Source of the DNA: Octopus sinensis | Lineage: Eukaryota | Assembly: GCF_006345805.1 (NCBI RefSeq) | Contig: NC_043003.1 | Coordinates: 100,254,001 to 100,318,000 of the forward strand | Length of the DNA stretch: 64,000 bases | Direction: 5' to 3' | In this document: piece by piece, positions 3,579 to 60,639 of the stretch | How positions within the stretch are numbered: position 1 is the stretch's first letter | How the letters are laid out: each line of letters begins with the position of its first letter | Notes under the pieces: generated by a model | Told to the model about the DNA's origin: nothing | Databases searched by the model: none | What the model saw: the letters and a program-made list of their open reading frames with translations, nothing else | Position numbers and translations under genes: made by a program

Positions 3579-4357
3579 GGATCTTTTCCTTTTGAACGGC
3601 ACATGTCAACACAATTTCTAGTTAACTAAACACTTTTAAACTTCGTATACTGGTAGAATGTGTTTATAAAACATCATTTTTTCTTGGCTTTATTGAGAAA
3701 ATTCTATAGTTTGTAAGATATTTCGTCTGAAATTTCGAGCATTTCGGCAATTTTAACCAATCGCTGACCTCCATTTGGGGTGAAAACATTCCGTGATGTA
3801 TGAATATGTCCATCGTTTAAGAAACAGATTGGGTTTATTTACATTTGCGAAGAAAAAAAGATACCCTTCCCCCACCCCTAACCCTAAATCTAAAATAGAT
3901 TGAAATGCAATAGATCGATACTAGGGTTATAATTATGGGTGACAATTTCATACAACACCGCTACGGAAAATGGGATTTTTTCCTAGCGGTGTCAAATGAA
4001 AATGTCACCCATAATTATAACCCTAGTATCGATCTATTGCATTTCAATCTATTTTAGATTTAGGGTTAGGGGTGGGGGAAGGGTATCTTTTTTTCTTCGC
4101 AAATGTAAATAAACCCAATCTGTTTCTTAAACGATGGACATATTCATACAGCACGGAATGTTTTCACCCCAAATGGTGGTCAGCGATTGGTTAAAATTGC
4201 CGAAATGCTCGAAATATCTTACAAACTATAGAATTTTCTCAATAAAGCCAAGAAAAAATGATGTTTTATAAACACATTCTACCAGTATACGAAGTTTAAA
4301 TGTGTTTAGTTAATCTAGAAATTGTATTGACATGTGCCGTTCAAAAGGAAAAGATCC
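3579..4357. repeat. Long palindrome: inverted dimer of a MITE-like element, arms ~390 bp
   Basis: ggatcttttccttttgaacggcac... mirrored by ...gtgccgttcaaaaggaaaagatcc, centre ~3973. Same family as the monomer at 6745-7150. Confidence 0.9.
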
Positions 4358-4589
4358 CATTCGTTTTATGATCAAAAAGTAAAAACGGAAATATTAACAC
4401 TTTTTCGCTATCTCAGAATAACCTGTCAAACTTGTATATCACTTTTATCTTTTGTTTCAAGCAATGGTTCGCGGACATGCTGGAGCAACGCCTTGAAGGT
4501 TTTAGTCGAACAAATCAATCACTGTTACTTATTTCTTTAAAGCTTGTTAGTTATTTTATCAAGTCCTCTTGCCAGACTGTTAAATTACG

Positions 4590-4810
4590 GAGACATAAAC
4601 AAGCCGACACCGGTTATCAAGCGGTGATGGAGGACAAACACACACACACACATACGTATGATAAGTTTCATTCAGTTTCCATTTACCAAATCCATTCACA
4701 CGGCTTTTGTCGGCACGGGACTATAATAAGAAACACTTGCCGAAGGTTCCACTCAGTGGGACAGAAATCTGTAGTTAGGAAGCAAACTTCGTTCCACACA
4801 TCCATACCTG
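4590..4810 (-). mobile_element. Degenerate tRNA-derived SINE (abundant family)
   Basis: Reverse-complement similarity to the copies at 22808 and 35205. Confidence 0.7.
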
Positions 4811-5410
4811 CACCATAAAAAGTAAAATTGTTGCATTCCTGTTTTTAGCAACGAAAATTATAATTTTTTCCAAAAACAAAAGAAAAGGAAATTTAAATCC
4901 ACACCATTTCAAATTTTTTATTCCACACCTCCCCACCCCCAAATTTTTGTCGTTGAATTATTTGATTTTGTTTTCTAATTTCTAACAGGAGATAAACCTC
5001 TGTACTTAAGCCTTTGACAGTGTCCCCCTTGTCTGGTGGTCAATGCGAAAACTAGGGATAGATGAGAGTTTGGTGAGAGCTATACAAGCTATGTACAGGA
5101 ATGCTACCAGTAAGGCGAGGGTTGGCTGTTTCGCACCTCTCCTTTAAAAATGCATTTTTTTAAAAATATTTTTCGGATTCTATCGTTTTAGATGTCGGAG
5201 ATTACGAATATATATTTTTTTTAATTTTACCCTTTTCCCCCTCCCCATTTAAATTTTTTTATTTTGTTTACTTTAAAGAGATCGTAGCGAATTGACGAAC
5301 ATATGCAAATCGAAATTAAATACAAAAACATTAAAGTGAAAAGAGTTTACGTTTTAATTGTGCTTGCCTTAAATAATCGTAAATAATAATAGTTTAATGT
5401 AAATTAAATA

Positions 5411-5774
5411 ACATCGTAAGGTGTACTAGCCATCTGAATGTGGCTAGCCACTTGGGGTGGGGTGTTACTGATGCTTTTAGCCCCAGGCGATCAACGTCAC
5501 CAGATGGACTTTAGACACAAAATTTCAGTGCCCTTGTGTTATTTGCAAAGGGAGGTCATCCTCCCTCGAAAACTTAAGTGATACATACTATAGTCCGTAT
5601 GTATCACTTAGGTTTTCGAGGGAGGATGACCTCCCTTTGCAAATAACACAAGGGCACTGAAATTTTGTGTCTAAAGTCCATCTGGTGACGTTGATCGCCT
5701 GGGGCTAAAAGCATCAGTAACACCCCACCCCCAGTGGCTAGCCACATTCAGATGGCTAGTACACCTTACGTTGT
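5411..5774. repeat. Near-perfect palindrome, arms ~178 bp, 8-nt loop (5589-5596)
   Basis: acatcgtaaggtgtactagcc...gatacatac / gtatgtatc...ggctagtacaccttacgttgt; only a few mismatches. Confidence 0.95.
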
Positions 5775-5949
5775 CGAGCGGTTACTGTTTATATCTCGTT
5801 CAGAGATTTATTAATGCTAAATACACATCATTTTATGAGAAACAAACATTGATATTTAATAATTGTTATAAAGTTTAATAAGGGGCTCAAGTTTCAGCCC
5901 TCCACCAATTTTAAATTTTGAACTTTTTCATCCATTTATCTATTTATCT

Positions 5950-6110
5950 TGTCAACTAAATGTGGCGGTCCTATAGAAGACGGCATTACTGTTCGCTAGT
6001 AGTACCCTTTGTATAAACCGTTTCCAGTTCTGAGCTACATTGCCTTCGAGATTAAGCTCATTAGGGCGATTATTCAATCCTACTTCTGACACCAAGTAAA
6101 TTGACACAAC
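5950..6110 (-). mobile_element. Ty3/gypsy LTR-retrotransposon 5' remnant (PBS plus gag N-terminus)
   Basis: TGGTGTCAGAAGTAGGATT (6094-6076) is complementary to a tRNA-Leu-type 3' end including CCA. It is followed by ELNLEGNVAQNWKRFIQR, which resembles metazoan gypsy gag starts. Confidence 0.6.
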
Positions 6111-6341
6111 ACAGGGCGCAGCCATTACTATGTGTTCATTTACACAATCTTGTGACGTCACACTTTTGTGTGCATATCTTAACGTAAAATCACTCTCATT
6201 ACACTATTTCGTTGCGTATTCTCATACAGATACGTAAAATGTACATAACTTATTTTCTCATTGTCTTCATCATCTATGATCCTTCGATGGCCTGCATACC
6301 CTCACAGTTTGAGTATAACTCAGTCGCTATTTCAGAAATGT

Positions 6342-6744: not shown

Positions 6745-7150
6745 CCCTTTTCGGTTTGAACGGCAGTTTTTTAAAATAATTTCCACGTAACTAAACACTT
6801 CTAAACTTCGTATACTGGTAGAATGTGTTTATAAAACACCTTTTTCCCTTGGCTTTATTGAGAAAATTCTATAGTTTGTAAGATATTTGTTGTTTTTTCT
6901 TCAATTTCTGCAATTTCAACCAATCAATGACGTCTATTGAGGTGAAAACATTCTGTGCCGTATGAATATGTCCCTCGTTTAAGAAACAGATTGGGTTTAT
7001 TTACATTTCTGAAGAAAAAAGATACTCTTCTCCCCACCCCTAACCCTAAAACAGATTAAAATGCAATAGATCGATACTAGGGTCATAATTATGGGTGACA
7101 ATTTCATATGACACCGCTAGAAAAAACTGCTGTTCAAACCGAAAAGATCC
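6745..7150. mobile_element. MITE-like element with ~25-30-bp TIRs
   Basis: cttttcggtttgaacggcagtttt ... aaaactgctgttcaaaccgaaaag. Body matches the arms of 3579-4357. Confidence 0.75.
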
Positions 7151-7904
7151 CCCTTTTCTCCCACCCCTAACCCTATATAAAAAAAAAAGCACTTTCTTGA
7201 AATGTATCCAGTACTTATACCGAAGTTACGCCTATGAACCTAATAAATACCAGAGTCCGATGAAAGTTGAGGTGGTTTGCGTATACATACTTAAGAATAC
7301 TCGATGGAGTTTTAGAATAGCTGTCCTTCGAAGTCCCAAACTCCAAGGGAAACGAAGAGGGTAACGCAGTAGCGTTACCTTCTAATTGTTTTTCAAATTT
7401 CAATTTTTCAGAATCGCAATTTCCTTTGTACACAACATGAGAATGGTAAAAAAAAAACAAAATAGGCCAGAAATATCATTTTCCATCCCCGCCAAATATA
7501 TTAATGTAAAATGCCATATTCCGTAAACAATATATCAAATTTTTCATGCCTGACGCTTTAATAAAAGAATTTGCCTGGAACCATAAAGTACCGTTGTCAC
7601 AAACTGTATACGAATTTTATTGTATACACAGCATTTTACGTATGAAATCCCTCAGTATATTCACATAAAAGACGTTTAATAAAACATTTTATTGAAATGA
7701 ATGCAAAACATGTATTCCCTCACTATAGTGAACAACATTAAATATGTTAAAAAGAAAAAAATAAGAGCAAGTGGGCTGGGTTATACGAAAGTGAAGCTGT
7801 GATGTTGCTAGATTAGTTGAATGTGTTAAGACCTGACAGTCATCCATTCGGAGCAGTTGCCAAATATCGTTCTCCACAGGTGTTCACCAAGGTTAGTTAA
7901 TACC

Positions 7905-9879: not shown

Positions 9880-12720
9880 ATAAAAAATACCTTAATCAAC
9901 AAAGCTGAGGCATCAAACCTACTGAGTCATGAGAAAAAAAGGAAATAAAGAAACAACTCACCACTTGGAACATATTAGTAAAGATTTAAACCTTTTATGC
10001 ACAGCACCAAACTCAATTTTCACAAACAAACTAGACAATGAACAATTCCTAATAAAGAAAACTCACAAGTCCATCTAACAAAAAGGAAAATCAAAAACAT
10101 TTGGAACACAGATCTTAGAAACAGAAAATTCGCATTCTGGAACATGCTTAAAGATTCCAACAAGGTAGAAATTTACAAACGCTGGATGAGTTCAATACCG
10201 AGAGTTCTCCCCAACAAACTGCAAATAAAAATCCCAAATGAACTTGATGAACAGAGAGAAGTGAGAGAAAGATTTGCATTATATCAAATAAAAATAGAAA
10301 GAGAACTTACTTAGATTAAGAGCATCGAACAATGAAGAAAAATACAAAATCATCGACAATGCACAGGGAACTGAATAAACATGCCAAATGGACAACCTCT
10401 TGAAAACATTTCTAAACTTTGGATAGAAACATGTGAAGCTGAAGAAAGAAATTCCCTTCAATGCTGAATTTTTCTTCCAAGGCTATGAATCAAACTTCAA
10501 AAAAACAATTTAATTTGGATGATCCCTTATGAAGACAGTAAAAAATAATCATAAATAATTGAACAGAGAACAAACCACCCTTAATTATGGATACATAAGA
10601 AAACAATGACACAGAACTAACCACTCACCAGGAAAAAAACGGTTTACACACTAGAAATAGGGATCACTCACAACATAAAAATACTAGATCCATGCTTCAA
10701 AGTTCCCAGCCAACCATAAGCCTTGGAAAAACACAAAATAATACTAGAAATAAGATTTTCGGCAAGCCAGAAACTTCAGAAAAAACTGCAGCACAGTTAC
10801 GAATTTTAATTACCAAACAGGAATGAAAAAGACATAAAGCACTGTACCCAATGGCAATCAAAGGACCCTAAGACATGAACACAGACAACAGGTCGATAGA
10901 GCAATATCATCACTCTTTTAACTCAAATTCCAACAGACACATCAACAACCCAAACGTTTTTTATCCCCAGACCAGAGAAACAGGGACACACATTGGCACA
11001 TAACACACAGGAAAAGCCAAAGGTAATTAACCTATTAACTCCTATCAATAACGAAGATCAATATACTCTCAAAGGGGCTAAAATTCACCCCAACTCCACA
11101 AAGACCCAACCAAAATTAAATTAAAAATAGTATAATGGAATTCTGCAGAAAACTAAGACTTACAGAAGCACTAGTTAACTCTAATATCGAAGATGATTCA
11201 CTATTTAAAAACAAAAGCAACCACATTACATACAAAGAAATAAAACACTCGATGAGTTCTGTAACCACGTTGAAAACTTCCCCTACACAAACAAAAAATT
11301 AACTCAAGCTTCAGCACTCCTCAGTGGAAGGAGTTAATTGAATTACAAAATGATGAGGTATTAACTATTCAAGAAGCCAATAAAGGGAGTGCAGTAGTAG
11401 TGATGGATGTGGACTACTACAAAAACCTAGTAGTATTCATACTGAATAATGAAGACTACAATCCCCAAAGAATAATGAAAAGCCTCTCGATATTAGTTCA
11501 ACTACATGGAAAAGGCTTGATGAAAAAAGAAATAAGCTACATAACTAACTTTAAATGTAAACCCAACCTCTTTTATGGCTTACTGAAAATTCATAAAAGC
11601 CATATTATAAATGAAGCAATTAAAAAATCACTGAAGTCATATACATACATGTACCAACACCAGGAGACCTTAAACTAAGGCCCATTATAGCTGGACCATC
11701 CTGTGAAATGCACCGACTGAGTTACTTCATTGACACCCTCTTGAAACCACTTCTAAAATATATTAAGTTACATTAGAGATGATTTGGACATGATAACTTC
11801 CCAGAAAGAGTAAAGGAAAAAACACTGTCTCTTTTGATGTTGTAAACCTGTATATTAATATCTCCCATAATTATGGATTAGAAGCAACTCAATTCAGGCT
11901 GGGAAAATATCCAGAAGAAATACCAGAACATATTAAAATTCATTCTCCAGCAAAATCACTTCATGTTTGACACTACTGTATACCAACAAAAATTTAGAGT
12001 TGTGATGGGAACCAAGGCAGCCCCCGTTCTTTCAAACCTGACAATGGGCTATTTGGAACTAACAGTATATCAGGAGTCACTCAAAAAATTCGGAAATACA
12101 TAAAGGGAAATTGGAAAAGATATTTGGATGACTGTTTCATTCTATGGAATGAGAACATGAAGAATCTTTTGGAATTCAAGACTCCTCAATAGCATAAATA
12201 CAATTCACAATGGAACACAAGAAAAGGAACGCTTTTTCTAGATATACTAACCAAAAAAAGTAAATAGAAACCAACATATTTTACAAAACTATAGACTTGA
12301 AACAATATTTATTATTTAGCTCATGCCACCCGAGACATATTAAAATAAATATCCCATTCAAAGTTGTTGTAATCGAGTTCTCTGGTGTTTTTTTTTTTCC
12401 CAACACTATAGTGCAGATTCTTTTCACTAGATTCATCATCATCATCATCATCATCGTTTAAAACGGACGCTAAACGATGATGATGAATCTAGTGAGAAGA
12501 ATCTGCACTATAGTGTTGGAAAAAAACACCAGAGAACTCGATTACAACAACTTAAAAACATACTTGTCAACAGACACTACCCAACTTCACTTATAGTTGA
12601 TGGGATAAAATGTGCATAAAGAATTAATATACGAACACTAAGAGAGGTCAAACAAAACTACTCACGCACTCTAAAGATATCATTCAACCTGCCAGAAATA
12701 GCTCTGAAATTTTTCCCGTA
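9880..12720 (+). mobile_element. Degenerate Penelope-like element (RT; 3' truncated)
   Basis: Frameshifted RT motifs: ANKGSAVVVMD, FDVVNLY, MGTKAAP, KRYLDDCF (~12118), SCHPRHIKINIPF/NLVRRICTIV. Left boundary uncertain. Confidence 0.85.
12361..12553. repeat. Fold-back palindrome with an RTE/SINE 3' tail at its centre
   Basis: Left arm 12361-12460 is the reverse complement of 12471-12553 (the (ATC)n tract is longer). Loop aaacggacgc. Confidence 0.95.
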
Positions 12721-24280: not shown

Positions 24281-24499
24281 AAAATCATAAAGCTGGTGTG
24301 GCCACTGCAGTCAGTTAGAGTAAGAAACACCATACCTTAAACCTTCTAAGTAATTAGCTATTGTCATTGAAACTATTGCACAAAATTATATATGTACTAT
24401 AGTTTCAAAAGACAATTATATATATATCATTTAATGTCCGTTTTCCTTGCTGGCATGGGTTGGACAGTTTAATAAGATCTGGCAGGTTGCATAGGAATC

Positions 24500-24912
24500 C
24501 AATATCAGCAAGGATGTTTGATCGAATACTAAGAAATTAGAACTTTTTATAATACAATTGAAGAGTGGAGAAATCGTACATTTTCAGAATTTATCTAAAA
24601 GAATTTCCTGTCAACTTTGAAAAATACACTAAATTATGTGAAGCTTTGTTAGATTTTACGACCAGATTTTCTGACTTCAGAAAGACAGAAATTGAACTAA
24701 AATTGTTGAGTGATCCATTTTCATTTATTTATGTGGAAGTCCCAGCCAAATACCAGTTAGAACTCATTGAGCTTCAAAGTAGAGAATTTTTGAAAACTTA
24801 TAGAAAACATGGCCTTCTTGACTTTTACAAGAAATTGCATTCTTTCAATGAATTTGATCAAATTGCTAATTTAGCTAGAAAACTATTGTGCATGTGGGGT
24901 AGTACATACTGA
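24500..24912 (+). mobile_element. hAT (Charlie/SPIN, GTF2IRD2-like) transposase C-terminal fragment
   Basis: RFSDF...DPF...QLELIELQ...F(Y)KKL...LLCMWGSTY is characteristic of the hAT dimerisation region. Stops at the palindrome. Confidence 0.75.
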
Positions 24913-24915
24913 ACT

Positions 24916-25341
24916 CTAATATATCATTTAAAGGGACTTTGAAATCATCACCATCGGTTAACGTCTGTTTTCCATGCTGGCATGGGTTGGACGGTTTGAC
25001 TGAGGACTGGCAAGCCAGTAGGCTGCACCAGGCTCCAATTTTACCACGATTTCTACAGCTGGATGCCCTTCCTAACACCAACCACTCTGAGAGTGTGGTG
25101 GGTGCTTTTTACATGTCACTGGCACAGAAGCAAGCCAGTGACATGTAAAAAGCACCCACCACACTCTCAGAGTGGTTGGTGTTAGGAAGGGCATCCAGCT
25201 GTAGAAATCGTGGTAAAATTGGAGCCTGGTGCAGCCTACTGGCTTGCCAGTCCTCAGTCAAACCGTCCAACCCATGCCAGCATGGAAAACAGACATTAAC
25301 CGATGGTGATGATTTCAAAGTCCCTTTAAATGATATATTAG
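24916..25341. repeat. Fold-back palindrome of a 5'-truncated RTE-tailed SINE plus ~30 nt of flank; arms 208 bp, 10-nt loop
   Basis: Arms 24916-25123 and 25134-25341 are reverse complements with one mismatch seen (acgtc vs acatt). Confidence 0.97.
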
Positions 25342-25648
25342 GTTTTCGATATTGTTAATACTTTCTTTCTATATACATATGTATTGTAATATGTTTCTTC
25401 CAACCACATGATTTTGTGTTCAGTCCCACCATGTGGTAACTTTAGCAAATATCTTCTATAGCCCCAGACTAACCAAAACCTTGTGAGTGGATTTGTTTAA
25501 TGAAAGCTGAAAGAAGTCCATGTGTGTGTGTGTCTCTCTCTTTGTCTTGACATCAGGTGATTGTTGTAAATGAATGTCATATTCTGCAAAAAAGGAAGGG
25601 CATAGCAAGTGCAAGTATCAAATGTAATCCAAGCAGCTAACAGGAAGG

Positions 25649-27240: not shown

Positions 27241-27639
27241 TCTTGCCTATCCTAATAGCAAGTTCAAGTATCAAATGTGGTTCAAACAACTGACAATATG
27301 AACAGCAGGGAAATTGTTCTCCTGGAATCCCTGAGCCATGGCGACCGAAGTGGAGATTAGGGTTTAAAAGGGTTTCATAGATTTATTGGAGAGGTGGATG
27401 AAGGTTGTGGGGAGAATGTGATAAGTGAGAAGAAGGATAGAAAGAGAGAAAGTCAAACATGCATTAAGAAGCTCTATTAACTTTGGTTGTTAGTAGGTTT
27501 ATATTTGAGTCACCTTGTAGAAGAAAACACAAAAATGATTTTTAAATGTATTTGCATATAATTAACATATTTTTCAGCCTTGTGCTGAACTGTAGGGTTC
27601 AGGAAACTGTGTAAAAAGAACACACTAGGCAACATAGTC

Positions 27640-27840
27640 TTTTATTCTTTTACTTGTTTCAGTCATTTTACTGTGGTCATGCTGGGGCACCATCTTTAGT
27701 CGAGCAAATTGACCCCAGAGACTTATTCTTTGTAAGCCTAGTACTTATTCTATCATTCTCTCTTGCTGAACTGTTAAGTTACAGGGATGGAAACACACCA
27801 GCATTGGTTGTTAAGTGATGTTGGGGAACAAACACAGACA
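27640..27840 (-). mobile_element. 3' half of tRNA-derived SINE
   Basis: Reverse complement of the 23000-23190 sequence. Confidence 0.75.
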
Positions 27841-27876
27841 CATAAACATATACATACATATATATGTGTATATATA

Positions 27877-28204
27877 TGGCTCAGTGGTTAGAGCATCGAG
27901 CTTACGATCGTGAGGTTGTGAGCTCGAATCCCGGACCAGGCTGCGTGTTGTGTTCTTGAGCAAGACACTTTATTTCACGTTGCTCCAGTTCACTCAGCTG
28001 TAGAAATGAGTTGCGACGTCACTGGTGCCAAGCTGTATCGACCTTTGTCTTTCCCTTGGATAACACTGGTGGCGTGGAGAGGGGAGGCCGGTATGCATGG
28101 GCGACTGCTGGTCTTCCATAAAACCACCTTGCCCAGACTTGTGACTAGGAAGGTAACTTTCTAGGTGCAATCCTATGGTCAGTGTCGTGACCGAAGGGGG
28201 TCCC
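27877..28204 (+). mobile_element. Second tRNA-derived SINE family
   Basis: A box TGGCTCAGTGG (27877-27887), B-box-like GAGCTCGAATCC (~27920-27931), then tgttgtgttcttgagcaagacacttt central domain. Confidence 0.8.
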
Positions 28205-28229
28205 AGATCCCAGATATATATATATATAT

Positions 28230-28299
<70 letters not shown>

Positions 28300-28304
<5 letters not shown>

Positions 28305-28455
28305 GCTTCATTCAGTTTCTGTCTGCCAAATCCACTCACAAGGCTTTAGTTGGCCCGTAGCTATAGTAGAAGTCCCAAGGTACCATATAGTGGGACTGAA
28401 CCTGGAGCCATGTGGTCGGTAAGCAAGCTACTTACCACACAGCCACTCCTGCACC
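28300..28455 (-). mobile_element. SINE head (5' part), same family as 22808
   Basis: Reverse complement aggtgcaggagtggctgtgtggtaagtagc... Confidence 0.8.
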
Positions 28456-28470
28456 TAAAAGTCTGAGACA

Positions 28471-28575
28471 CTTACAGCACCTAAGTTTCCCAAGCAGTCA
28501 CCCATCTAGGCTCAACGTTGCTTAACTTCGGTGATTGGATGAGAACCAGTGCTTTCATCGTGATATGGCCGTATA
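28471..28575 (-). pseudogene. 5S rRNA pseudogene with ~11-nt internal deletion
   Basis: TACGGCCATATCACGATGAAAGCACTGGTTCTCATCCAATCACCGAAGTTAAGCAACGTTGAGCC-TAGATGGGTGACTGCTTGGGAAACTTAGGTGCTGTAAG matches metazoan 5S but lacks GGTTAGTACTT. Confidence 0.9.
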
Positions 28576-29843
28576 TAAAAAAAAAAGTATATGATGGTCA
28601 GAAATGGAATGCTTTTGGCCACAGTTCTCTTCTGTCAGAACTAACGTTGAAGTTAATCAACTATAAAAACTTACATGATTAGTGTCTCTCATATTACAAG
28701 AAATATCAGAAATCATTTTACAGAAAGGTTTTTACTATATTAAAAAAATGGAATGATGCTTTTGATAATAAAATTGTAGATCCCACTAAAAAGATGGAAT
28801 GAACATAGTTGAACTGTCTTTGACCATGGGTCTACTTGATTATGTTTGACTTGGGGTGCTGAACAACTACAATCTGCTGGTCATGACCACTATCATGTTT
28901 GGAACTATCTCTACAATTTGATGATGTTGCTCAATACTAAGACATAGCAAAGTACATGCTAAGTGTTTACATATCCTCCTTATTATCATCATCATTGAAA
29001 TGTCAATTTCTTTATACTAGTATTGACAAGTCTTCTGTTCAATCTTGCGTCATCTGGACGTGTAGCTCGATATTTCTCAGTATCACGTCACTACTTTTAC
29101 CCCTTTTACTATTGGTTGCTCACATCATGTTTTCACTCAGCATTCATATCATACATCCATTGTTAGTTGGTTCATTTCTTACACATAGCGGGTATGTTTA
29201 TTGTCTGCTCATCTGCTCAGTATCTGATCATCTTTTTTCTCTAGCTTTCATGCAAATTAACATTACTCATTCAATGGATCCTACTTAACTATTTTCTCCA
29301 TCTAGAAATCTAATACATTTAACATCAAGTTTTGTTATTAAGCTGTGAGTCATACATCTTTCTTAAATTTTTGCATAGTGTAAGAAATCCTTTATTGCTA
29401 ACATATGCAACAACGTTTTGAAAGTCTTTAACTTCTTTTTACATTCTCTACTACATATTTTTTTCAACCACTTCCATCAGTAATGAACTCATCCCAGCAA
29501 CCACATACACATCATTGTTATTTAATTTCCCTGTTCCATACAAACATGCATTGGACAGTTTGATAGCATCTGATGGGCCCAAGTATTGCTCCAGTGTCTG
29601 CTATGATGTGGTTTCTGTAACTGGATGCCCTTTCCAATACCAACTGTTTTACAGTGTGCACAGAATGCTTGCTTTTTATATGGTACCAGCAGTTGTGAGG
29701 TTGCTATGCAGCTTGCAAGACTGCTAACACTGGAGGAGGCAGCCTTATGCTAGATGATGAGAGGGGTTTAGTAAAGAAATTGTTTTGTTTCCATTATGAG
29801 TGAGAGGTTTCAACTCAACTAATTTAATATTTATGTATTGCAG

Positions 29844-30003
29844 CAGAACTGATGGTTGACAAAGCAATGGAACTGAAGTATATTGGTGGAGTTTTTGGTG
29901 GAAACATTAAGCCAACACCGTTTTTATGTTTAGTATTGAAAATGTTACAGATTCAACCTGAGAAAGATATTGTTGTTGAATTCATCAGAAATGAAGATTT
30001 CAA
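29844..30003 (+). CDS. PRPF38A: PRPF38A coding exon 2
   Basis: (A)ELMVDKAMELKYIGGVFGGNIKPTPFLCLVLKMLQIQPEKDIVVEFIRNEDF(K); ttgCAG acceptor, GTAAGT donor; phases match exons 1 and 3. Confidence 0.97.
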
Positions 30004-32143
30004 GTAAGTAAAAACAAGCAGTTTCTGTTGGTGGACAACAATGAGCCTATAAAGAGGCCTAAATGTTGTGGCTCAGATCTACTAATCTTGCATTGGATAA
30101 GTTAATCCTTGATTAACTATTCTTGTAAACAAGTTGTGTCACATTTGGAACACTTCTGATCTGGTCTGGTCAATCAAAGTTTGCCTAAAGATAAAAGCAA
30201 CTACTATTACTATTGTGGGGCCAACAAGGAAATCTCTACATGATTGATCAATCTGTTAGAAATAACTGTCAGGTCCCCATAAAATCACATTCTGTAGGGC
30301 TGACCTGAAGGTGAAAAAAACTATTATCTTTCTTCAACGATGGGTTCTGCATAAAACAAAACTTTTCTTATTAGTCATTGTTTGATCTTTTTCTTTTTTT
30401 TTTCTCCATCATATAACTATTTCTGGTTATCTTAATTCTTCTTTTCTTTCTCAAATCACACTGTATCATCTTAAAGTGGAAAGGACACATTAGATAAAAT
30501 AGCCCTCAGTAGTCTGTCTAAAGATAAAACAAAGTCAAGGTTGGTACCTATAATCAGATCTGGCTCAAGAGTCAGATAAGAATTTGTTTCAAAAATTAAC
30601 GTAGTTATGTCCCCTTATCTTGCCTAATAAATTAGTGAAGCTATTTTGTAACAAATGAAAATAAAAAAAAACCTTTTTCCTCATTAGTTAATGGATTAAC
30701 AGTAAAGCAAAGAGAATTCTTTGATCTCAATTTCTGTTCATTAAAAATGAATTTTAAAACTATTTCTTGCCTTAACTTCCTCTAAAAACTCAGTAACCTC
30801 ATTAAGTGAAAAATTTAAAACCCTCCTTCTCCTCTACATGTCTAAACTATTTAGATGTTTGTGTTTGTTTCTTTATTTAGTCTCCCTGTTGGCAGGATGG
30901 AGGTATGTGGTCTATCACCCGAAATTCTATGGATATAAGCAAAAAAAATCAATCTTAAATTCTGTTACATTATCTTGGTTTACTGTGATTTTCTATCATA
31001 TCAATCTTTCATCATCATTAAGATGTGAGGTCAATCAGATGCAAAGCAGGATTATAATTAATTTGTTGTGCTGTTTTCCTGTAACACTCTCCCAGAGTTG
31101 ATAAAATGCCCACTCACTGTAGTCACCCTTATGCACCCTACATTTATCCCTTCACTGTTCCTACACCTTGCATATCATTCCCCTACTTCAGATCTATACT
31201 TCCCGAGCTATTATCTCTCCCACCTTATGTCTCTCCATACTGATATTTCCTATTAGCCACACCTCCACTCTTGTTCATCAGTCACTACATTCACCTCTAC
31301 CCCCATTGCTATGCATCTGTTACTCTCCCCTTACACTCTTATAAAAGCAACCACTCTCTCCTTCCCTCCCATGAAACACTGTCCATATCCTCACTTACAC
31401 TCACCTTCTTGTACCTTGGGAGTTTGCTTTGGAATTCCATCACTGCCTTCTTTTACCTTCTTCCCAATTACTCCCACTTGCCCCTATATAATGTGAGGTA
31501 ACTCTCTCTCTCTCTACACACACACATATATATATATATATACTACTACTACTAAAACTCTGTGATTGCTTGCTTGTGTGCATGCTTGTTTGTAATTTAA
31601 TTCAGCCAAACTGGTGCATAATGGGAAAATATTCTGAAAGTAAGGTACCCCTGAAATGTGAAAACAAACAGAATAAAACGAGTTTCGTGTAAATCGGACC
31701 ATGGATTCCCAAAATACGTGGTTTTTTGGGGGGGTACCTTCATAAATAGCCAGAATGGCACATAATGGGAATATACTTCAAAAGTAACATAACCTTGAAA
31801 TGGGAATATAAAATACTGTGAAAATGGTTTCATTAATTTTATGTTTACGTTATATTACAATTCCTTTTGCATTTTTGTAGATGTATGCACATATGCCATA
31901 AATAAATGCTGTTACTGGAGTTCAAGTTTATCCTGGAAGTTCTGTTTCTATTAGATGCTGTAAATAATCAATAAAACCTTAAATATGAACTTGTAAACCA
32001 GAAATATTTAACTGAATCATCATAAAATTAACTTTCATTTCAATACAAGATTGAAATCAGCTTCCATTCTTCATAACCTGAACTGTCAGTGACCCAATGG
32101 TTCATGGGTAGTCTACTATATATATATATATATATATATATAT

Positions 32144-32311
32144 GAGGGAATATTATTCCAAACTTACAGAGAAAAATTCAATTTAGAAATACTAAATCAA
32201 ATTTCACAAAATATAATATATATATATATATGAGGGAATATTATTCCAAACTTACAGAGAAAAATTCAATTTAGAAATACTAAATCAAATTTCACAAAAT
32301 ATAATATATAT
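32144..32311. repeat. Perfect tandem duplication, 88-bp period, embedded in (TA)n
   Basis: gagggaatattattccaaac...ttcacaaaatataata starts at 32144 and 32232. Confidence 0.9.
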
Positions 32312-32314
32312 ATA

Positions 32315-34301
32315 CTAGCTTAAGGTGACCAGCTCTACGCACGGGTAAGAGTGTGGTTGTTACTTTCTGTTGCTTCCTTTCAGCATGTAAAAAGCACCAT
32401 CCGAACGTGGCCGATTGCAGCGCCACCTTGACTGGCTTCTGTGCCGGGGGCATGTAAAAAGCACCAACCGATCGTAGCCGCTGCCAGCCCCCCTGGCACC
32501 TGTGCTGGTGGCACGAAAAAAGCACCCACTACACTCACAGAGTGGTTGGCGTTAGGAAGGGCATCCACCTGTAGAAACACTGCCGGATCAGACTGGAGCC
32601 TGGTGCAGCCTCCTGGCTTCCCAGACCCCGGTCAAACTGTCCAACCCGTGTTAGCACGGAAAACGGACGTTAAACGATGATGATGATTCTCCCTCTTTGT
32701 TTCTCTCTCCTTTCTCTCTCACTTTCTCACTCTCTTACTTTTCTTTTCTCTCGGACTCTCCCTCGCTTTCTCTTACTCTCTATCTTTATCTATCTCTCTC
32801 CCATTTATAAACAACAAAAGATCTTGAGTAAGTTGAGAAATAAAATATTTTGAAAGATCAATCATAAATATCAGGCAGTGACAACGGAAAGGTCTGCTTC
32901 AAGGCAGACAGCAAAACACTAACATTTAAAAGGGACAGACGAACTTGCGAGCTGAATAAAAATAATAAAATATTGGAAACCAAAGTTTGAAGGGATAGAA
33001 TCTGAGGATAGTAGAGTCACCCTGGCTGGCATTTCTTAACGACGGACAGCAACGTATTGACAGTTTAACGGCTGGCGTAAAATTTTGAACTTGATGTAAA
33101 AGAAAATTCCTAAACACCAAGTTTTGAAGTGATTGTTTCTTACGACAGTAGACTCACGATGGCAAGCATTCAAAACTTCTTCGTCATGGACGGCAACACA
33201 TTGGCGGTTAAAAGGCTGGCGCAAATTTTTTAGCTTGATGTAACAGAGAATTCCTAAACACCCACTCCTTTAAATTTTAATCCCCTTCCAGTCCCATTTA
33301 GACCCCTTTTCACATTTTGGTTAATATAACCCGATTTCATTCGGGTCTACTGGGGCCAAATTTTACAAGATGAGGAATTTTGTCCAGCACTTTTAACATA
33401 GGTGTGCATATTTTCAGCTCAACCGACCACATAATGCACACATTATATATATATGTATGTATATATATGTGTGTGTGTGTGTGTGCGCACGCATTATATA
33501 TACAAATGTATACAATTTATATATATATGTATAAATTAAATTAGAGATAAAACCACTAATAGGCAAATCAAACAGTGAAAAACATAAACCAAAACAAAAA
33601 TTAAAATATAATATACAAAATATATAAAATATAAAATTGAAAAATTTAAATTATTTATATTTAAAATTAAAATTATTAATTTATATTTATAATTTTAAAA
33701 AAAATATATATAACTATCGAACAGTATTAAAAAGTTTAATATGCATAAATACAGATATATACACTTTGTATATATACATTATATATACATATTTATATAT
33801 AGAACACACACACATATATAAATTAACCCAATAAATATCTGATTCATAAATTTGTTCTCATGATTGTGTGGTGGTGGTGGTGCTGGTGGCGATGATAATT
33901 CCCTCTATGAATGCAGCGCTGTCGAAGGCGGGGAGGGGGGAGATATAGAACGCCGTGACACGACGTTATAAAGAGAAAGTGAAGGTAAGAGAGTTAGACG
34001 CCATGAAACGACGTTATATATAGAAAGTGATGGGAAGGGAAGAAAGAGAGTGAGTGACGGAGGAAGACAGATGCATAAAAATATGAGAGTAGACTTGTCA
34101 AAGTGCGCTTTTGGCCCTAGCAACGACACCTTTTAAGATGGGGATTTCTAACCTAGCCCACTAACATCCTCACCTCATTTTACATGTCCCTGTAAAATTT
34201 TGGAGTCAATCCGACGGGATCTAGTGGCCTTTAACCCGTTCTCAATGCCAAAACCAGACAAACAAACAAACTTTTCGCATTTCAGATTTATAATATAGAG
34301 A
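32315..34301 (-). mobile_element. Non-autonomous Helitron
   Basis: Minus strand begins A|TCTCTATATTATAAATC (34301) and ends with a GC-rich subterminal segment plus CTAG|T (32318-32315): canonical TC...CTAG termini in an AT target. Confidence 0.7.
32380..32690 (+). mobile_element. RTE-tailed SINE nested in the Helitron
   Basis: Internal ~65-bp repeats (aaaagcacc...) and 3' tail aaaacggacgttaaacgatgatgatga. Confidence 0.85.
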
Positions 34302-35204
34302 TAAGATTAGAAAAAACCCCACCTTTTATCAATTCAATAATGAAAAATTAAATTATACCATTTAGAAAAATTAAATATAGAAAGATTAAATATAAGATAA
34401 AACATATAACAATGATTAATTAATTTGCAAAAAAAGTAAATAAAACGTATATATTTGGTAGAATGACACATGATTCATGGCTATATTTAAGAAATGATAA
34501 TAGTAATAATAATAGTAAAATCACTTCAATATAAATATAGCCACTCTTCAGGTTAAAGAAAAAAACAATAAAATAATTAATTAGATAAATTAATAAATAT
34601 ATATAAATAATCTTGTAAAATACGAAATATCTTAACAAATATATTCTTGTTTAAATAAAAAAAATAGAAAAAAAATAAGATACAATTAAAATATTTAAAA
34701 CAAATATATATATATATAAATAAAATACAAAATATACATTAATTGAAAACTAAATACTATAATTTAATCTATGTACATTAAATTAAATTATTAATTAATT
34801 TATTTATTTAATAAACATCTAAATAAAATCTTATACTCATTAAGTAATTTATACCAAAAACCTTAATGTTAAGTAATATACATAATGTTAGTACAAGCTA
34901 TAAATATTAGAATTAATAATAGGAAATGGTTTAAATATATACACACTTATTAGATAAACTAACTATATTATAAATATATGTGTAGTATATATAGATTTAA
35001 CTTCTTACTCAATTATATAGTTGACCAAAATATCAATTAATATTAAACTAATTTACTTAAACGTGATACTACATAATAAATAGACCACCTAACTCTTAAT
35101 ATATTGTCTTACAAAACTAACTCTCAAATTAAATTATATGTAATTTGTAAAATCACATTATAAAATTAATAATAATCATAAAAACATAATAAATAAATAG
35201 ATAT

Positions 35205-35603
35205 AGGCGCAGGAGTGGCTGTGTGGTAAGTAGCTTGCTAACCAACCACATGGTTCCGGGTTCAGTCCCACTGCGTGGCATCTTGGGCAAGTGTCTTCTG
35301 CTATAGCTCCGGGCCGACCAATGCCTTGTGAGTGGATTTGGTAGACGGAAACTGAAAGAAGCCTGTCGTATATATGTATATATATGTGTTTGTGTGTCTG
35401 TGTTTGTCCCCCTAGCATTGCTTGACAACCGATGCTGGTGTGTTTACGTCCCCGTCACCTAGCAGTTCGGCAAAAAGAGACCGATAGAATAAGTACTGGG
35501 CTTACAAAGAATAAGTCCCGGGGTCGATTTGCTCAACTAAAGGCGGTGCTCCAGCATGGCCGCAGTCAACTGACTGAAACAAGTAAAAGAGAGTAAAAGA
35601 GAG
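35205..35603 (+). mobile_element. Full-length tRNA-derived SINE
   Basis: Colinear with the 22808 copy. Confidence 0.85.
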
Positions 35604-35779
35604 AAAGATATACATATCGTAACTAATAATTATCAAGAAATTATATATAGATTAATGTGTTAACAACAATAATAATCACAATAATAATAATAATAATCAA
35701 ACTTAATACAATTCAAAAGTTAAATAATATTGTTAAATAAAAAAAGTTACTTAGCTTGTTGATGAAAATAATATAATAT

Positions 35780-36111
35780 AAAATTATTTACATCAAAAAC
35801 GTGCTTTTTTCTATGAAAATCCTTATTTTTTTACGATTTTTTCACTGCTGTGTTGCCACTTTTCGGTGTATTTCAACCAGAAAAATGTTCACTTGAAGAG
35901 AATAACAAGCTACATAATGCAAAATTTTTACGACCCGCTGGAATTGGAATTTTTGAAAAGTAAAAATTTTGCATTATGTAACTTGTTATTCTCTTCAAGT
36001 GAAAATTTTTCTGGTTGAAATACACCGAAAAGTGGCGACACAGCAGTGAAAAAATCGTAAAAAAATAGGTATTTTCATAGAAAAAAGCACGTTTTTGATG
36101 TAAATAATTTT
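35780..36111. repeat. Fold-back palindrome, arms ~152 bp, 28-nt loop
   Basis: aaaattatttacatcaaaaacgtgc...aaaatttttac / gtaaaaatttt...gcacgtttttgatgtaaataatttt; about 5 mismatches. Confidence 0.93.
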
Positions 36112-36284
36112 TGGTGTTAACATGGTCCGATTTGAATTTTATCTTCTACGGAAGGAAAAGCAACCCTTCTATCATACTCTCAATTTTGGTCAACTTGCGC
36201 CGCAGGGTCTCGGAGGAGATAGTGTTAGTTGAAGGTTACCAAACCTGGTGCACACAGACAACTTCAGCTTTATATAGAGAGAGA
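35932..36284 (-). mobile_element. Helitron 5' fragment
   Basis: A|TCTCTCTCTATATAAAGCTGAAGTTGTCTGTGTG start at 36284, similar in style to the 34301 and 43852 ends. Confidence 0.55.
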
Positions 36285-36849
36285 TAACACACACACATTA
36301 ATACACATACACACACACACGTATGTATGTATATATGTACATGAACCCAGGACCATGTGTTTGGAATGTAGTTTGTTACCACACAGCCACACCTGCCCCT
36401 ATGTATGTGTGTGTGCGTATGTGTGTATGGTTAGATATATTATGCATGTATATATGTGTATATATATGTGTACATATTACATGTACATCTATATATATAC
36501 ATCTACACATAAAATACAAAATACAAAGTTATATCTTGATATCGCTAGTGATAACAATACTCAAAATATATAACAGACTGGAATTGTAGGCCCGTCTCTT
36601 GCAATTTCGATCAGTTGGATCTTGTCCACCCTGCAGCGAAATTCATTTTTGGACTTTCTTCTATCGAAGGCATTTTAACAAAAATGCTTCCGTAAAGACG
36701 GTAAAGATATTGTCAATTTTCCCAAACAGGGACACAATTCAATTTTTAAACAATAACCAAAGCCCCGAAAGGGGGAGGGTTACGGTTTACAATTATTTAA
36801 CAAATGCAACACGTTTCCCTGGCGCAGAACCAACAAACGTGATTACAAT

Positions 36850-37281
36850 AGTCAAACAGTAATAATACTAACAACAAACCTTTTTGATTTATCCCCATTT
36901 ATGTGAAACCACTTATTCAAGTTCAAGTCATTGATGCAATTTTATACGAATTGCTAATACACACACACACACACTCACATAATAAGGGAATACTTTCACT
37001 TTAATAGTTTCACACTTGCAAAGAGAAAGTAGGAGAAAGTGTGGTGGTAATAGCAGGAGTAAACCACTTGAAATGTGAGAGGCAAATCGTAAAATATTGA
37101 ATTTTCTCAAATTTTTGCTTAATTGGGGGTCAAATTGAAAAAACTTGATATACCATGACCCAATCGAATCTATTTGGAAAAATCATAGGTAAATTCCAAT
37201 TGAAGAAATTCTATATTGTAGAATTGTATTAAAAAGAAACATGGGAACAGGCAGAGAAAATCTGCCTTTTATCATAAGAGA
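36850..37281 (-). mobile_element. Helitron-like 5' fragment
   Basis: A|TCTCTTATGATAAAAGGCAG start at 37281; left boundary uncertain. Confidence 0.45.
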
Positions 37282-37467
37282 TATATTTATTTATTTATTT
37301 CTGTAAGAGTTACAGGTTGGGAAGCCAACCAACTAAGGGATAGTACCTATCCAATATAGTGCTGGTAGTGTGCCCAATTATTAATACCCAAGTGCTAGTT
37401 ATTGCGTGACAATTTCGCAATCGAGTGTCATTTATGAGCAGGGGTAAAAAGTGGTTTACCCTTAATT

Positions 37468-37707
37468 TATATGGCAAAAAGAAAATGGAGAGGATGCAAA
37501 AATAACATACATCAGCTGATAGACATTCTGCTATGTCTATTTATTCCAAAACAAAAGGGAGTATTATAAGAATACATACACATGCAATGACTGTGTGCTG
37601 CACAGATCTTTTACTCCTTTATGTATTGGAATAAATAGACATAGTAGAATGTCTACTGGCTGATGTATGTCATTTTTGTATATCCTCCATTTTCTTTTTG
37701 CCATATA
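37468..37707. repeat. Older, diverged palindrome, arms ~95 bp, ~48-nt spacer
   Basis: tatatggcaaaaagaaaatggag...gggagta / tactccttt...ctccattttctttttgccatata. Confidence 0.85.
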
Positions 37708-50169: not shown

Positions 50170-50173
50170 GTAA

Positions 50174-60610: not shown

Positions 60611-60639
60611 ATGTGGAAATGGCATGAGAGCAAGGGAGT

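What the first reader, a model, noticed from the sequence alone, without database searches (positions are those of the whole stretch)
3579..37707. Unusual density of local fold-back palindromes (six in ~34 kb) of different ages and substrates
Seen: palindromes at 3579-4357, 5411-5774, 12361-12553, 24916-25341, 35780-36111 and 37468-37707, with arms ~90-390 bp, loops 8-48 nt, and identity from ~99% to clearly diverged. The substrates differ (MITE, SINE tail, Helitron, unknown). Inference: an ongoing snap-back/templated-inversion process, with tolerance of long palindromes. Three lie in PRPF38A introns and the others possibly in the zinc-finger 5' region, giving intramolecular dsRNA. Established: coleoid cephalopods have extensive ADAR editing that needs dsRNA.
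Basis: partly seen in the sequence, partly recalled or inferred. Interest (0 to 1): 0.7.

Follow-up and report, generated by a model that had tools for sequence, protein, structure and literature searches.

The report
Six hairpin palindromes, mixed origins, octopus
Six hairpin-forming palindromes in 34 kb of Octopus sinensis DNA are real, but they have more than one origin: one is a small palindromic transposon, two look like LINE retrotransposon insertions whose new DNA copy folded back on itself, and three are unexplained inverted duplications.

Summary
All six palindromes sit at the stated coordinates (±4 nt), with arms of 86-390 nt, spacers of 6-48 nt and arm divergence of 0.5-12%. Ten shuffled windows gave none.

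The window is Octopus sinensis chromosome CM016865.1. P4-P6 lie in PRPF38A introns. P1-P3 lie 2-11 kb upstream of a C2H2 zinc-finger gene.

The origins are mixed.
- **P1** is a palindromic derivative of a TIR element. It has a perfect 8-bp target-site duplication, and a monomer relative lies 2.4 kb away.
- **P2-P6** have no target-site duplication.
Their arms run through the (GAT)n tail into 32-72 nt of unique flank. This fits cDNA snap-back during target-primed reverse transcription, which has been seen experimentally for R2.
- **P2, P5 and P6** have no relatives in the sequence I could reach, so their origin is open.

A published dsRNA-potential measure gives 2.4% for this window against 0.44% for the O. 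bimaculoides genome, about 5-fold. That is enriched but not extraordinary.

Not tested: RNA editing, orthologous empty sites and read support. No Helitron feature was seen, but no formal Helitron scan was run.

The parts
3579..4357 (.). P1: 779-bp palindrome, arms about 390 nt, 6-nt spacer. It is a fold-back derivative of a TIR element (MITE).
   Evidence: The arms match a monomer relative at 6747-7124 at 84-86%. No tandem sub-repeats.
3571..3578 (.). Left copy of the 8-bp target-site duplication CATTCGTT of P1. The right copy is at 4358-4365.
   Evidence: Read directly. It was the best and only perfect TSD in the scan of all six palindromes.
4358..4365 (.). Right copy of the 8-bp target-site duplication CATTCGTT of P1.
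6745..7160 (+). Monomer member of the P1 family. It has one arm-equivalent body bounded by terminal inverted repeats of about 24 nt (CCCTTTTCGGTTTGAACGGCAG ... CTGCTGTTCAAACCGAAAAGATCC).
5411..5774 (.). P2: 364-bp palindrome, arms 178-180 nt, 8-nt spacer. No TSD and no other copy found.
   Evidence: The metagenome scan found nothing.
12361..12553 (.). P3: 193-bp palindrome. Centre to edge, each arm holds LINE 3'-end sequence and then 67-72 nt of unique flank.
12460..12486 (+). A 27-nt 5'-truncated copy of the LINE 3' end (positions 168-194 of the 195-nt unit, 26/27 identical), at the centre and right arm of P3. Its last 18 nt recur inverted at 12444-12461 (18/18).
24912..25344 (.). P4: 433-bp palindrome, arms about 212 nt, 10-nt spacer, one internal substitution and one indel. 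Arms are 31-32 nt of unique flank (24912-24943 and 25314-25344) plus LINE 3'-end sequence, tails outward (24944-25127 minus strand, 25134-25313 plus strand).
   Evidence: Both arms share private changes, including a 4-nt deletion that other copies lack.
24527..24911 (+). Fragment of a hAT-type (FAM200/GTF2IRD2-like) transposase gene. Its homology stops at ...GSTY, exactly at the left edge of P4; the rest of the gene is not seen downstream.
35780..36111 (.). P5: 332-bp AT-rich palindrome, arms 152 nt, 28-nt spacer. No TSD and no other copy found. Lies in PRPF38A intron 2.
37465..37710 (.). P6: 246-bp palindrome, arms about 100 nt, 48-nt spacer, 12% diverged. No clear TSD; the TA-rich edge is ambiguous. 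Lies in PRPF38A intron 2.
57743..60607 (-). LINE copy A (RT domain). Its 3'-terminal 190-290 nt is the unit found in P3 and P4. Copy B at 51230-53838 (minus strand) is colinear with it.
   Evidence: colinear alignment; Pfam RVT_1; list of 3'-end copies of varying length.
22262..62800 (+). PRPF38A, exons at about 22262-22399, 29837-30010, 40151-40276, 50083-50163, 56436-56519 and 62665-62800. The gene continues beyond the window. It hosts P4, P5 and P6 in its introns.
   Evidence: (tblastn), (annotated PRP38 gene in the same record).
14611..16212 (+). C2H2 zinc-finger gene (533 aa), exactly as annotated in GCA_006345805.1. P1-P3 lie 2-11 kb upstream.

Best explanation
The cluster is real but has more than one origin. 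(1) P1 is a palindromic MITE. It is a member of a TIR-transposon family in which the body of the element has been copied in inverted orientation up to the terminal repeat. It lies between the two copies of an 8-bp target-site duplication, so it either transposed as a unit or arose in place from an inserted monomer. (2) P2-P6 are local inverted duplications made in place, without target-site duplication. For P3 and P4 the most likely mechanism is snap-back during target-primed reverse transcription (TPRT) of a LINE. The LINE endonuclease nicks the target, and reverse transcription starts at the (GAT)n tail and stops early, after 27 nt in P3 and about 185 nt in P4. In P4 the stop is at a short inverted repeat in the LINE 3' UTR. 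The free 3' end of the cDNA then folds back and primes synthesis on the cDNA itself. Synthesis runs back through the tail and 32-72 nt into the flanking DNA to which the cDNA is attached. The end is then joined to the upstream side of the break, in P4 with loss of the rest of a hAT gene fragment. This gives a palindrome whose axis is the retro-copy's 5' end, with tails outward and arms ending in unique flank. P2, P5 and P6 have the same outward form. Either they arose by the same route with no recognisable retro-copy, or by DNA-level fold-back; this is not resolved. (3) Consequence (inferred): in PRPF38A pre-mRNA, P4-P6 would form near-perfect hairpins of 100-210 bp, which are the kind of substrate ADAR hyper-edits. 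Shown: the structures, the TSD, the composition of the arms and the LINE relationship. Inferred: the snap-back mechanism, its timing and any RNA consequence.
For: P1: perfect 8-bp TSD CATTCGTT and a monomer relative with 24-nt TIRs. P2-P6: no TSD of 4 nt or more at or near the boundaries. P4: both arms share private variants against five other copies, and both include 31-32 nt not found next to any other copy, so they are copies of each other and not independent insertions. P3: 26/27 match to the LINE 3' end at the centre, and an 18/18 inverted copy of its tail. The unit is the 3' end of a LINE with an RT domain, and it occurs as copies truncated at 27, 57, 68, about 190 and about 290 nt, as expected of TPRT products. 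In both P3 and P4 the axis coincides with the 5' truncation point and the tails point outward. About 13 other copies cover only about 2.5% of the window, so two of five axes landing there by chance is unlikely. The left edge of P4 is a rearrangement junction, because hAT homology stops at 24911. Snap-back cDNA synthesis before 5' junction formation, sometimes onto nearby target DNA, was directly sequenced for R2-mediated insertion in human cells (PMC11371274). L1-induced foldbacks and local inverted duplications are reported in PMC11702581. Hairpin potential was computed.
Against: No ancestral or empty-site sequence could be obtained, so the order of events (LINE copy first and duplication later, or both at once) is not shown. 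P4's axis lies at a short inverted repeat intrinsic to the LINE 3' UTR (CTGGCAC..GTGCCAG), which could equally nucleate a DNA-replication template switch in a pre-existing copy. The reported R2 snap-backs mostly end within the cDNA, and extension 32-72 nt into duplex flank is my extrapolation. P2, P5 and P6 carry no recognisable retroelement sequence. Copy numbers of P2, P5 and P6 in the genome are unknown, because only about 120 kb of cephalopod DNA was available. P6's TA-rich edges could hide a TA duplication. The palindromes were not checked against reads.
Confidence: 0.5

Rival explanations
1. P2-P6 arise by DNA-level fold-back or template switching, independent of retrotransposition. During replication or break repair, a nascent 3' end anneals to a short inverted repeat on its own strand or on the opposite strand. 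It copies 100-200 nt backwards and then returns to the original template. P3 and P4 involve LINE ends only because those ends carry hairpin-prone sequence or microsatellite tails that stall forks.
For: No TSD on five palindromes. P4's axis lies at an intrinsic short inverted repeat of the LINE 3' UTR. P2, P5 and P6 show no retroelement sequence. Foldback-templated inverted insertions at breaks and expansion of inverted repeats by template switching are documented (PMC11724301 and PMC13100816; PMC7954356). A TSD-less 146-bp palindrome also exists in O. bimaculoides locus L003.
Against: P3's axis has no intrinsic inverted repeat, yet it sits exactly at the end of a 27-nt retro-copy. Two of five axes coincide with LINE 5' truncation points although such copies cover only about 2.5% of the window. 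The documented short-range template switches and break-site foldbacks are mostly under 100 nt, compared with arms of 86-213 nt here.
Confidence: 0.3
2. All six are ordinary members of palindromic or long-TIR transposon families (MITEs or foldback elements), and the local density simply reflects a transposon-rich region.
For: P1 clearly is such an element. Palindromic MITEs explain high dsRNA potential in Xenopus (PMC5625713). The window is transposon-rich, with LINE, hAT, mariner and tRNA-derived SINE sequences. Too little genome was available to exclude low-copy families.
Against: P2-P5 are young (0.5-5% arm divergence) yet lack any TSD. The arms of P3 and P4 are a LINE end plus unique flank, not a transposon body. 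None of P2-P6 has another copy in the window or in the other loci.
Confidence: 0.12
3. Some of the near-perfect palindromes, especially P4 and P2, are artefacts of the PacBio-based assembly, for example chimeric fold-back reads.
For: The assembly GCA_006345805.1 is long-read based (Li et al. 2020, as cited in PMC10700109). P4's arms are 99.5% identical. Read support was not checked.
Against: All six carry substitutions and indels between the arms. Arms of 90-390 nt with short asymmetric spacers do not resemble read-scale adapter-skipping chimeras. Both edges of P1 are confirmed by a TSD. A similar palindrome exists in an independent short-read-based O. bimaculoides assembly.
Confidence: 0.05
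4. The palindromes are maintained because the hairpin RNAs have a function, such as regulating PRPF38A or the zinc-finger gene, acting as ADAR sponges, or serving as endo-siRNA or miRNA precursors.
For: Strong predicted hairpins. Three lie in the introns of one gene. Octopus shows exceptional hyper-editing and dsRNA potential (PMC5625713).
Against: No match to any Rfam family reaches the gathering score; there are only generic sub-threshold hairpin hits. The arms decay with apparent age, up to 12% in P6, as expected of neutral sequence. No conservation or expression data were available.
Confidence: 0.05

Closest known systems
Snap-back 5' junctions in target-primed reverse transcription (R2-mediated PRINT insertions, PMC11371274; L1-associated foldbacks and local inverted duplications, PMC11702581)
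   Same: As in P3 and P4, the 3' end of the cDNA primes synthesis complementary to the cDNA, and sometimes to nearby target DNA, before the 5' junction forms. This puts antisense element sequence next to upstream DNA. The event occurs after full-length or truncated cDNA synthesis, and no regular TSD results.
   Different: Those are experimental events in human cells, with R2 at rDNA or with over-expressed L1. Here they would be germline-fixed events of an octopus LINE. The inverted copy runs through the tail into 32-72 nt of flank and forms a complete short-spacer palindrome. The mechanism is inferred from structure only.
Palindromic MITEs, for example the ~200-bp palindromic Harbinger repeat of Xenopus tropicalis (PMC5625713)
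   Same: P1 is small and non-coding, is palindromic over its whole length, is flanked by a TSD, belongs to a family and would fold into tight dsRNA on its own.
   Different: The TSD is 8 bp (compatible with hAT, P or Merlin; the superfamily is not determined), not the 3 bp of Harbinger. The family's monomer has only 24-nt TIRs, so P1 is a fold-back derivative and not the family's standard form. P2-P6 do not meet the MITE criteria.
Short-range template-switch mutations and foldback-templated inverted insertions at breaks (PMC7954356, PMC11724301, PMC13100816)
   Same: An adjacent sequence is copied in reverse complement, creating or extending a hairpin, with no TSD.
   Different: The reported events are mostly 5-100 nt, and here the arms are 86-213 nt (P2-P6). 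Two axes coincide with retro-copy ends, which those models do not predict.
L1 twin priming and 5' inversions (from my own knowledge: Ostertag and Kazazian 2001)
   Same: An aberrant TPRT outcome that places part of the element in inverted orientation at the 5' side.
   Different: Twin priming inverts a different segment of the element and does not duplicate it or the flank. In P3 and P4 the same segment plus flank is present twice. Two ends priming on two RNAs could give head-to-head copies, but it could not give palindromic flanks.

Membership tests
MITE / non-autonomous TIR DNA transposon (P1) | Terminal inverted repeats | tested here: met
   P1 is palindromic throughout. The monomer relative at 6745-7160 has TIRs of about 24 nt.
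MITE / non-autonomous TIR DNA transposon (P1) | Target-site duplication of fixed length directly flanking the element | tested here: met
   Perfect 8-bp CATTCGTT at 3571-3578 and 4358-4365.
MITE / non-autonomous TIR DNA transposon (P1) | Multiple dispersed copies, and an autonomous partner that encodes the transposase | tested here: inconclusive
   There are two copies in the window. Genome-wide copy number and the partner could not be searched.
MITE / TIR DNA transposon (P2-P6) | Target-site duplication flanking the palindrome | tested here: not met
   No direct repeat of 4 nt or more, or 8 nt or more with one mismatch, at boundaries shifted by up to 12 nt that is consistent with the palindrome ends. 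P6's TA-rich edge leaves a 2-bp TA duplication undecidable.
MITE / TIR DNA transposon (P2-P6) | Family of related copies | tested here: inconclusive
   No other copy in the 64-kb window or in about 55 kb of other cephalopod loci. That is far too little sequence to exclude a family.
Drosophila-type Foldback elements | Long terminal inverted repeats built from tandem sub-repeats | tested here: not met
   Tandem Repeats Finder found nothing in 3400-6000.
Snap-back TPRT product (P3, P4) | A retroelement 3' end with its tail abutting genomic flank | tested here: met
   LINE 3'-end unit with (GAT)n tail. The unit is colinear with the 3' ends of LINE copies A and B.
Snap-back TPRT product (P3, P4) | The inverted copy starts at the cDNA 3' end, so the palindrome axis is the element's 5' truncation point and the tails point outward | tested here: met
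   P3's axis is at the 5' end of a 27-nt copy. P4's axis is at unit positions 8-12.
Snap-back TPRT product (P3, P4) | The two arms are copies of each other, not independent insertions | tested here: met
   Shared private substitutions, a shared 4-nt deletion and duplicated unique flank.
Snap-back TPRT product (P3, P4) | The retro-copy and its inverted duplicate arose in one event, so the pre-insertion site is empty | not testable with these tools
   Orthologous loci of other octopus species could not be retrieved.
   No formal Helitron scan was run. By eye, the ends of P2, P5 and P6 (ACATCG.., AAAATT.., ATTTAT..) do not begin with TC, and no Rep/helicase-like ORF stands out in the ORF list. 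Pfam was run on only ten selected ORFs.
Known structured RNA families (Rfam) | Score at or above the family's gathering threshold | tested here: not met
   The only such hit in the window is a 5S rRNA-like sequence at 28469-28576. The palindromes give only sub-threshold generic miRNA-hairpin matches.

The most novel reading that the evidence does not exclude
The octopus LINE whose 3' end sits at the centre of P3 and P4 may snap back frequently during target-primed reverse transcription. Two of about 15 copies in this window are of that kind. If so, retrotransposition itself would seed thousands of near-perfect, short-spacer hairpin loci in introns. TSD-less palindromes such as P2, P5 and P6 would be the extreme of the same process, with little or no cDNA. 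That would give a mechanistic source for the exceptionally high dsRNA potential and hyper-editing load reported for octopus, which was left unexplained in PMC5625713. It would also imply unusual tolerance of long palindromes in the germline.
Probability: 0.2. Interest if true: 0.7.

Novelty: new member of a known kind. Interest (0 to 1): 0.4.

Why it matters
Octopus has one of the highest measured loads of long, near-perfect dsRNA-forming loci and of ADAR hyper-editing (PMC5625713). In Xenopus the source is known to be a palindromic MITE, but in octopus no source has been named.

This window shows that short-spacer palindromes are locally about 5 times denser than the published genome average, and that most of them are not classical MITEs. 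If the retrotransposition-coupled snap-back reading of P3 and P4 holds genome-wide, three things would follow:
- LINE activity would be directly tied to the creation of ADAR substrates.
- There would be natural, germline-fixed examples of a TPRT side reaction so far seen mainly in engineered systems.
- It would raise the question of how 200-400-bp palindromes survive replication in this lineage.

If it does not hold, the finding reduces to an ordinary transposon-rich region with one palindromic MITE and a few inverted duplications.

Tried and rejected
**Searches that gave nothing useful**
- **Orthologous loci.** A PRPF38A protein search returned no cephalopod orthologue. A search with the zinc-finger ORF was swamped by vertebrate zinc fingers. 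The cluster look-up of the zinc-finger protein found nothing. The look-up of encoding contigs returned only the window's own record. No empty-site test was therefore possible.
- **Family membership of P2 and the LINE unit outside the window.** Two metagenome scans found nothing. Loci from O. bimaculoides (L002, L003) and an unidentified ENA cephalopod assembly (L001) contain no relative of any arm, and not even the LINE 3'-end unit.
- **Loops.** The spacers of P1, P2, P5 and P6 match nothing else in the window. A 16-nt resemblance between P1's centre and its own terminus has E = 0.13 and was dropped.
- **Rfam.** There were only sub-threshold generic hairpin hits.

**Ideas considered and rejected**
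- **The 31-32 nt outer segment of P4 continues the hAT reading frame.** I thought so at first. Protein and DNA alignments to paralogues show that homology ends at 24911.
- **"SINE-A" as a discrete SINE.** I first treated it this way, with a full-length 5' end at P4's axis and a TSD on the 51.2-kb copy. One search showed that the unit is the 3' end of a LINE and that the 51.2-kb copy continues into the LINE. P4's axis is therefore a truncation point, not a full-length end.
- **Two TPRT events priming from both ends of a break.** This could give head-to-head copies but cannot explain the palindromic unique flanks.
- **Independent adjacent insertions for P4.** This is excluded by the shared private variants.
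- **Palindromes lying near tRNA-derived SINE copies.** Three of the six lie within 56-180 bp of such a copy. The pattern was noticed after the fact and the orientations are inconsistent, so I did not pursue it.

Full report
**Where the window comes from**

The 533-aa zinc-finger ORF at 14611-16212 is an exact annotated protein of Octopus sinensis assembly GCA_006345805.1, chromosome CM016865.1. The returned locus is identical to window 4611-26212, so window position 1 is about 100,254,001.

The same record annotates a PRP38 gene starting there.

P4 therefore lies in intron 1, and P5 and P6 lie in intron 2. P1-P3 lie 2-11 kb upstream of the zinc-finger CDS. It is not known whether P1-P3 are transcribed.

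**Check of the observation**

All six palindromes are present.

| Palindrome | Coordinates | Arm length (nt) | Spacer (nt) | Arm substitution divergence |
|---|---|---|---|---|
| P1 | 3579-4357 | ~390 | 6 | 2.1% (+4 indels) |
| P2 | 5411-5774 | 178-180 | 8 | 1.7-2.8% |
| P3 | 12361-12553 | 86-99 | ~10 | 4.7% |
| P4 | 24912-25344 | ~212 | 10 | 0.5-1.4% |
| P5 | 35780-36111 | 152 | 28 | 3.3% |
| P6 | 37465-37710 | ~100 | 48 | 12.3% |

- A BLAST census of the window finds these six, plus a tail-to-tail pair of LINE-end copies at 19043-19155 and looser pairs at 57.5-57.9 kb. Ten block-shuffled windows gave none.
- Each palindrome folds as RNA into one long hairpin, with uninterrupted stems of 30-161 bp.

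**Is the density unusual?**

Porath et al. 2017 measured how often a random 50-nt region has a reverse-oriented match of at least 40 nt at more than 95% identity within 2 kb. They reported 4.4 x 10^-3 for O. bimaculoides and called it exceptionally high among 19 species.

- My ungapped re-implementation gives 2.4 x 10^-2 for this window, about 5.6-fold higher.
- About 55 kb of other cephalopod DNA that I could fetch holds one comparable palindrome, at O. bimaculoides L003 4173-4313. It has perfect arms of about 60 nt, and I saw no obvious TSD by eye.
- The window is therefore enriched. The comparison crosses species and assembly types, and short-read assemblies tend to lose palindromes. I treat it as a local enrichment within a genome already known to be rich in such loci.

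**P1**

- The palindrome is flanked by a perfect 8-bp direct repeat, CATTCGTT, at 3571-3578 and 4358-4365.
- Each arm is 84-86% identical to a single-copy relative at 6747-7124. That relative ends in terminal inverted repeats of about 24 nt.
- The arms follow the monomer up to the point just before its right terminal repeat. P1 is therefore a fold-back derivative of a TIR element.
- There are no tandem sub-repeats, so it is not a Drosophila-type Foldback element.
- An 8-bp duplication is compatible with hAT, P or Merlin. I did not determine the superfamily.

**P4**

Alignment of both arms with five other copies of the embedded repeat shows three things:
- The arms share private substitutions and a 4-nt deletion.
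- Each arm carries 31-32 nt (24912-24943 and 25314-25344) that no other copy has next to it.
- The repeat's (GAT)n tails point outward, and its 5' part meets at the axis.

The arms are therefore copies of each other, and the duplicated block is "unique flank plus repeat".

The left edge is a rearrangement junction. The ORF at 24565-24912 is a hAT-type (FAM200/GTF2IRD2-like) transposase fragment, 79% identical to O. bimaculoides proteins. Both protein and DNA homology stop at 24909-24911 (...GSTY), although intact paralogues continue with CCEQFFS....

**P3**

- Positions 12460-12486 match the last 27 nt of the same repeat (26/27).
- Positions 12444-12461 are the inverted copy of its last 18 nt (18/18).
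- Outside these, each arm is 67-72 nt of sequence that is unique in the window.
- P3 therefore has the architecture of P4 with a much shorter repeat part.

**What the repeat is**

I first treated it as a SINE. One search shows that it is the 3'-terminal 190-290 nt of a LINE.
- Copy A (57743-60607, minus strand) and copy B (51230-53838, minus strand) are colinear from the RT-containing ORFs (Pfam RVT_1) through this unit to the tail. A third copy at 63345-64000 has the same layout.
- Isolated copies are truncated at many lengths: 27, 57, 68, about 190 and about 290 nt. This is expected of 5'-truncated products of target-primed reverse transcription (TPRT).
- In both P3 and P4 the palindrome axis is therefore the 5' truncation point of a retro-copy.

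**Mechanism for P3 and P4**

In TPRT the first-strand cDNA is covalently joined to the DNA on the tail side of the nick.
- If the cDNA's 3' end folds back and primes on the cDNA, synthesis runs back through the tail and into that flank.
- The predicted product is a palindrome with its axis at the retro-copy's 5' end, tails outward and arms ending in unique flank. It would have no regular TSD and an irregular junction on the other side. This is what P3 and P4 show.
- In P4 the axis lies at a short inverted repeat in the LINE 3' UTR (consensus CTGGCAC..GTGCCGG; in the P4 copy CTGGC-N10-GCCAG). That repeat would give the cDNA end a built-in snap-back primer.
- Snap-back synthesis before 5' junction formation, onto the cDNA and less often onto nearby target DNA, has been sequenced directly for R2-mediated insertions in human cells. 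L1-associated foldbacks and local inverted duplications have also been described.
- The main rival is a later DNA-level template switch nucleated at the same short repeat. P4 alone cannot exclude it. P3, whose axis has no intrinsic repeat, argues mildly against it.
- Two independent TPRT events from the two ends of a break could give head-to-head copies, but they could not give palindromic flanks.

**P2, P5 and P6**

- None has a TSD. P6's TA-rich edge leaves a 2-bp TA duplication undecidable.
- None has another copy in the window or in the other loci.
- Their spacers match nothing.
- I saw no Helitron features.
- They are either in-place fold-back duplications (RT-driven with no recognisable cDNA, or DNA-level) or low-copy palindromic repeats. 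The data do not decide between these.

**Consequences**

- If transcribed, all six would form long dsRNA, and P4-P6 would do so within PRPF38A pre-mRNA. A link to ADAR editing is plausible, given what is published on hyper-editing and dsRNA in octopus. It was not tested here.
- No palindrome reaches the threshold of any Rfam family.
- The accumulated substitutions show that palindromes with arms of 180-390 nt and spacers of 6-10 nt have persisted for some time. This is compatible with, but does not prove, unusual tolerance of palindromes.

**Verdict**

P1 is a palindromic MITE, a known kind of element. P3 and P4 are best read as natural snap-back TPRT products; the mechanism is known experimentally, and here it is inferred from structure. 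P2, P5 and P6 are unresolved.
- The decisive tests could not be run with these tools: orthologous empty sites, read support, genome-wide copy number and census, and editing data.

Noticed in passing
window 28469-28576 (- strand): A full-length 5S rRNA match (Rfam RF00001, 62.8 bits against a gathering score of 38) inside PRPF38A intron 1. It lies next to a (TA)n tract and a fragment of the tRNA-derived SINE. It could be a 5S pseudogene or retro-copy, or the head of a 5S-derived SINE.
   Followed up: no
window 19043-19155: Tail-to-tail junction of two LINE-3'-end copies. An older plus-strand copy (18937-19101, 70% to consensus) abuts a 57-nt minus-strand copy (19097-19153, 88%) exactly at the (GAT)n tail. 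The arms are 76-77% alike. This suggests that existing tails are used as insertion targets.
   Followed up: partly
window 50163-50232: PRPF38A exon 4 ends at about 50163, and the intron begins GTAATCATCATC... This is the (ATC)n tail of a minus-strand LINE-3'-end copy (50176-50232) lying within a few nucleotides of the splice donor.
   Followed up: no
window 4435-4814, 22808-23188, 25400-25516, 27638-27864, 28282-28460, 35204-35600, 50948-51070, 56737-56912: A tRNA-derived SINE (GGCGCAGGAGTGGCTGTGTGGTAAG...GGTTCAGTCCCACTGCGTGGC...) occurs at least 8 times and is shared with O. bimaculoides (81% to L002). Three palindromes (P1, P4, P5) lie 56-180 bp from a copy. The pattern was noticed after the fact and the orientations are inconsistent.
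   Followed up: partly
window 24426-24484 and 24527-24911: The 385-bp hAT (FAM200/GTF2IRD2-like) gene fragment is bounded on the left by another LINE-3'-end fragment (unit positions 127-186, minus strand) and on the right by P4. Retro-copies or breaks appear to have cut it on both sides.
   Followed up: partly
L003 4173-4313 (O. bimaculoides CM046603.1, about 158.33 Mb): A 146-bp palindrome with perfect arms of about 60 nt, a 21-nt spacer and no obvious TSD by eye. It shows that orphan short-spacer palindromes also occur in another Octopus species and in another assembly type.
   Followed up: partly
L002, L003 (about 35 kb non-N, O. bimaculoides) compared with the window: The LINE 3'-end unit occurs about 15 times in the 64-kb O. 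sinensis window but is absent from the two O. bimaculoides loci. The tRNA-derived SINE and the hAT fragment are shared. This hints that the LINE lineage expanded after the split about 34 Mya, or that the sample is simply too small.
   Followed up: no
window 44089-44505 (-), 19738-20034 (+), 45583-47331 (+), 11400-11678 (+): Other transposon remnants: a mariner-type transposase fragment (Pfam Transposase_1, E = 3e-11) and two ORF groups with a YGLPKVHKS-type motif. The motif resembles Penelope-like or other RT N-terminal motifs, but there was no Pfam hit.
   Followed up: no
(database behaviour): The PRPF38A query returned no cephalopod protein at all; the best hit was 86% (Mytilus). Yet the O. 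sinensis record carries an annotated 337-aa PRP38 protein. The window's own 90% cluster appears to be missing from, or hidden in, the protein search.
   Followed up: no
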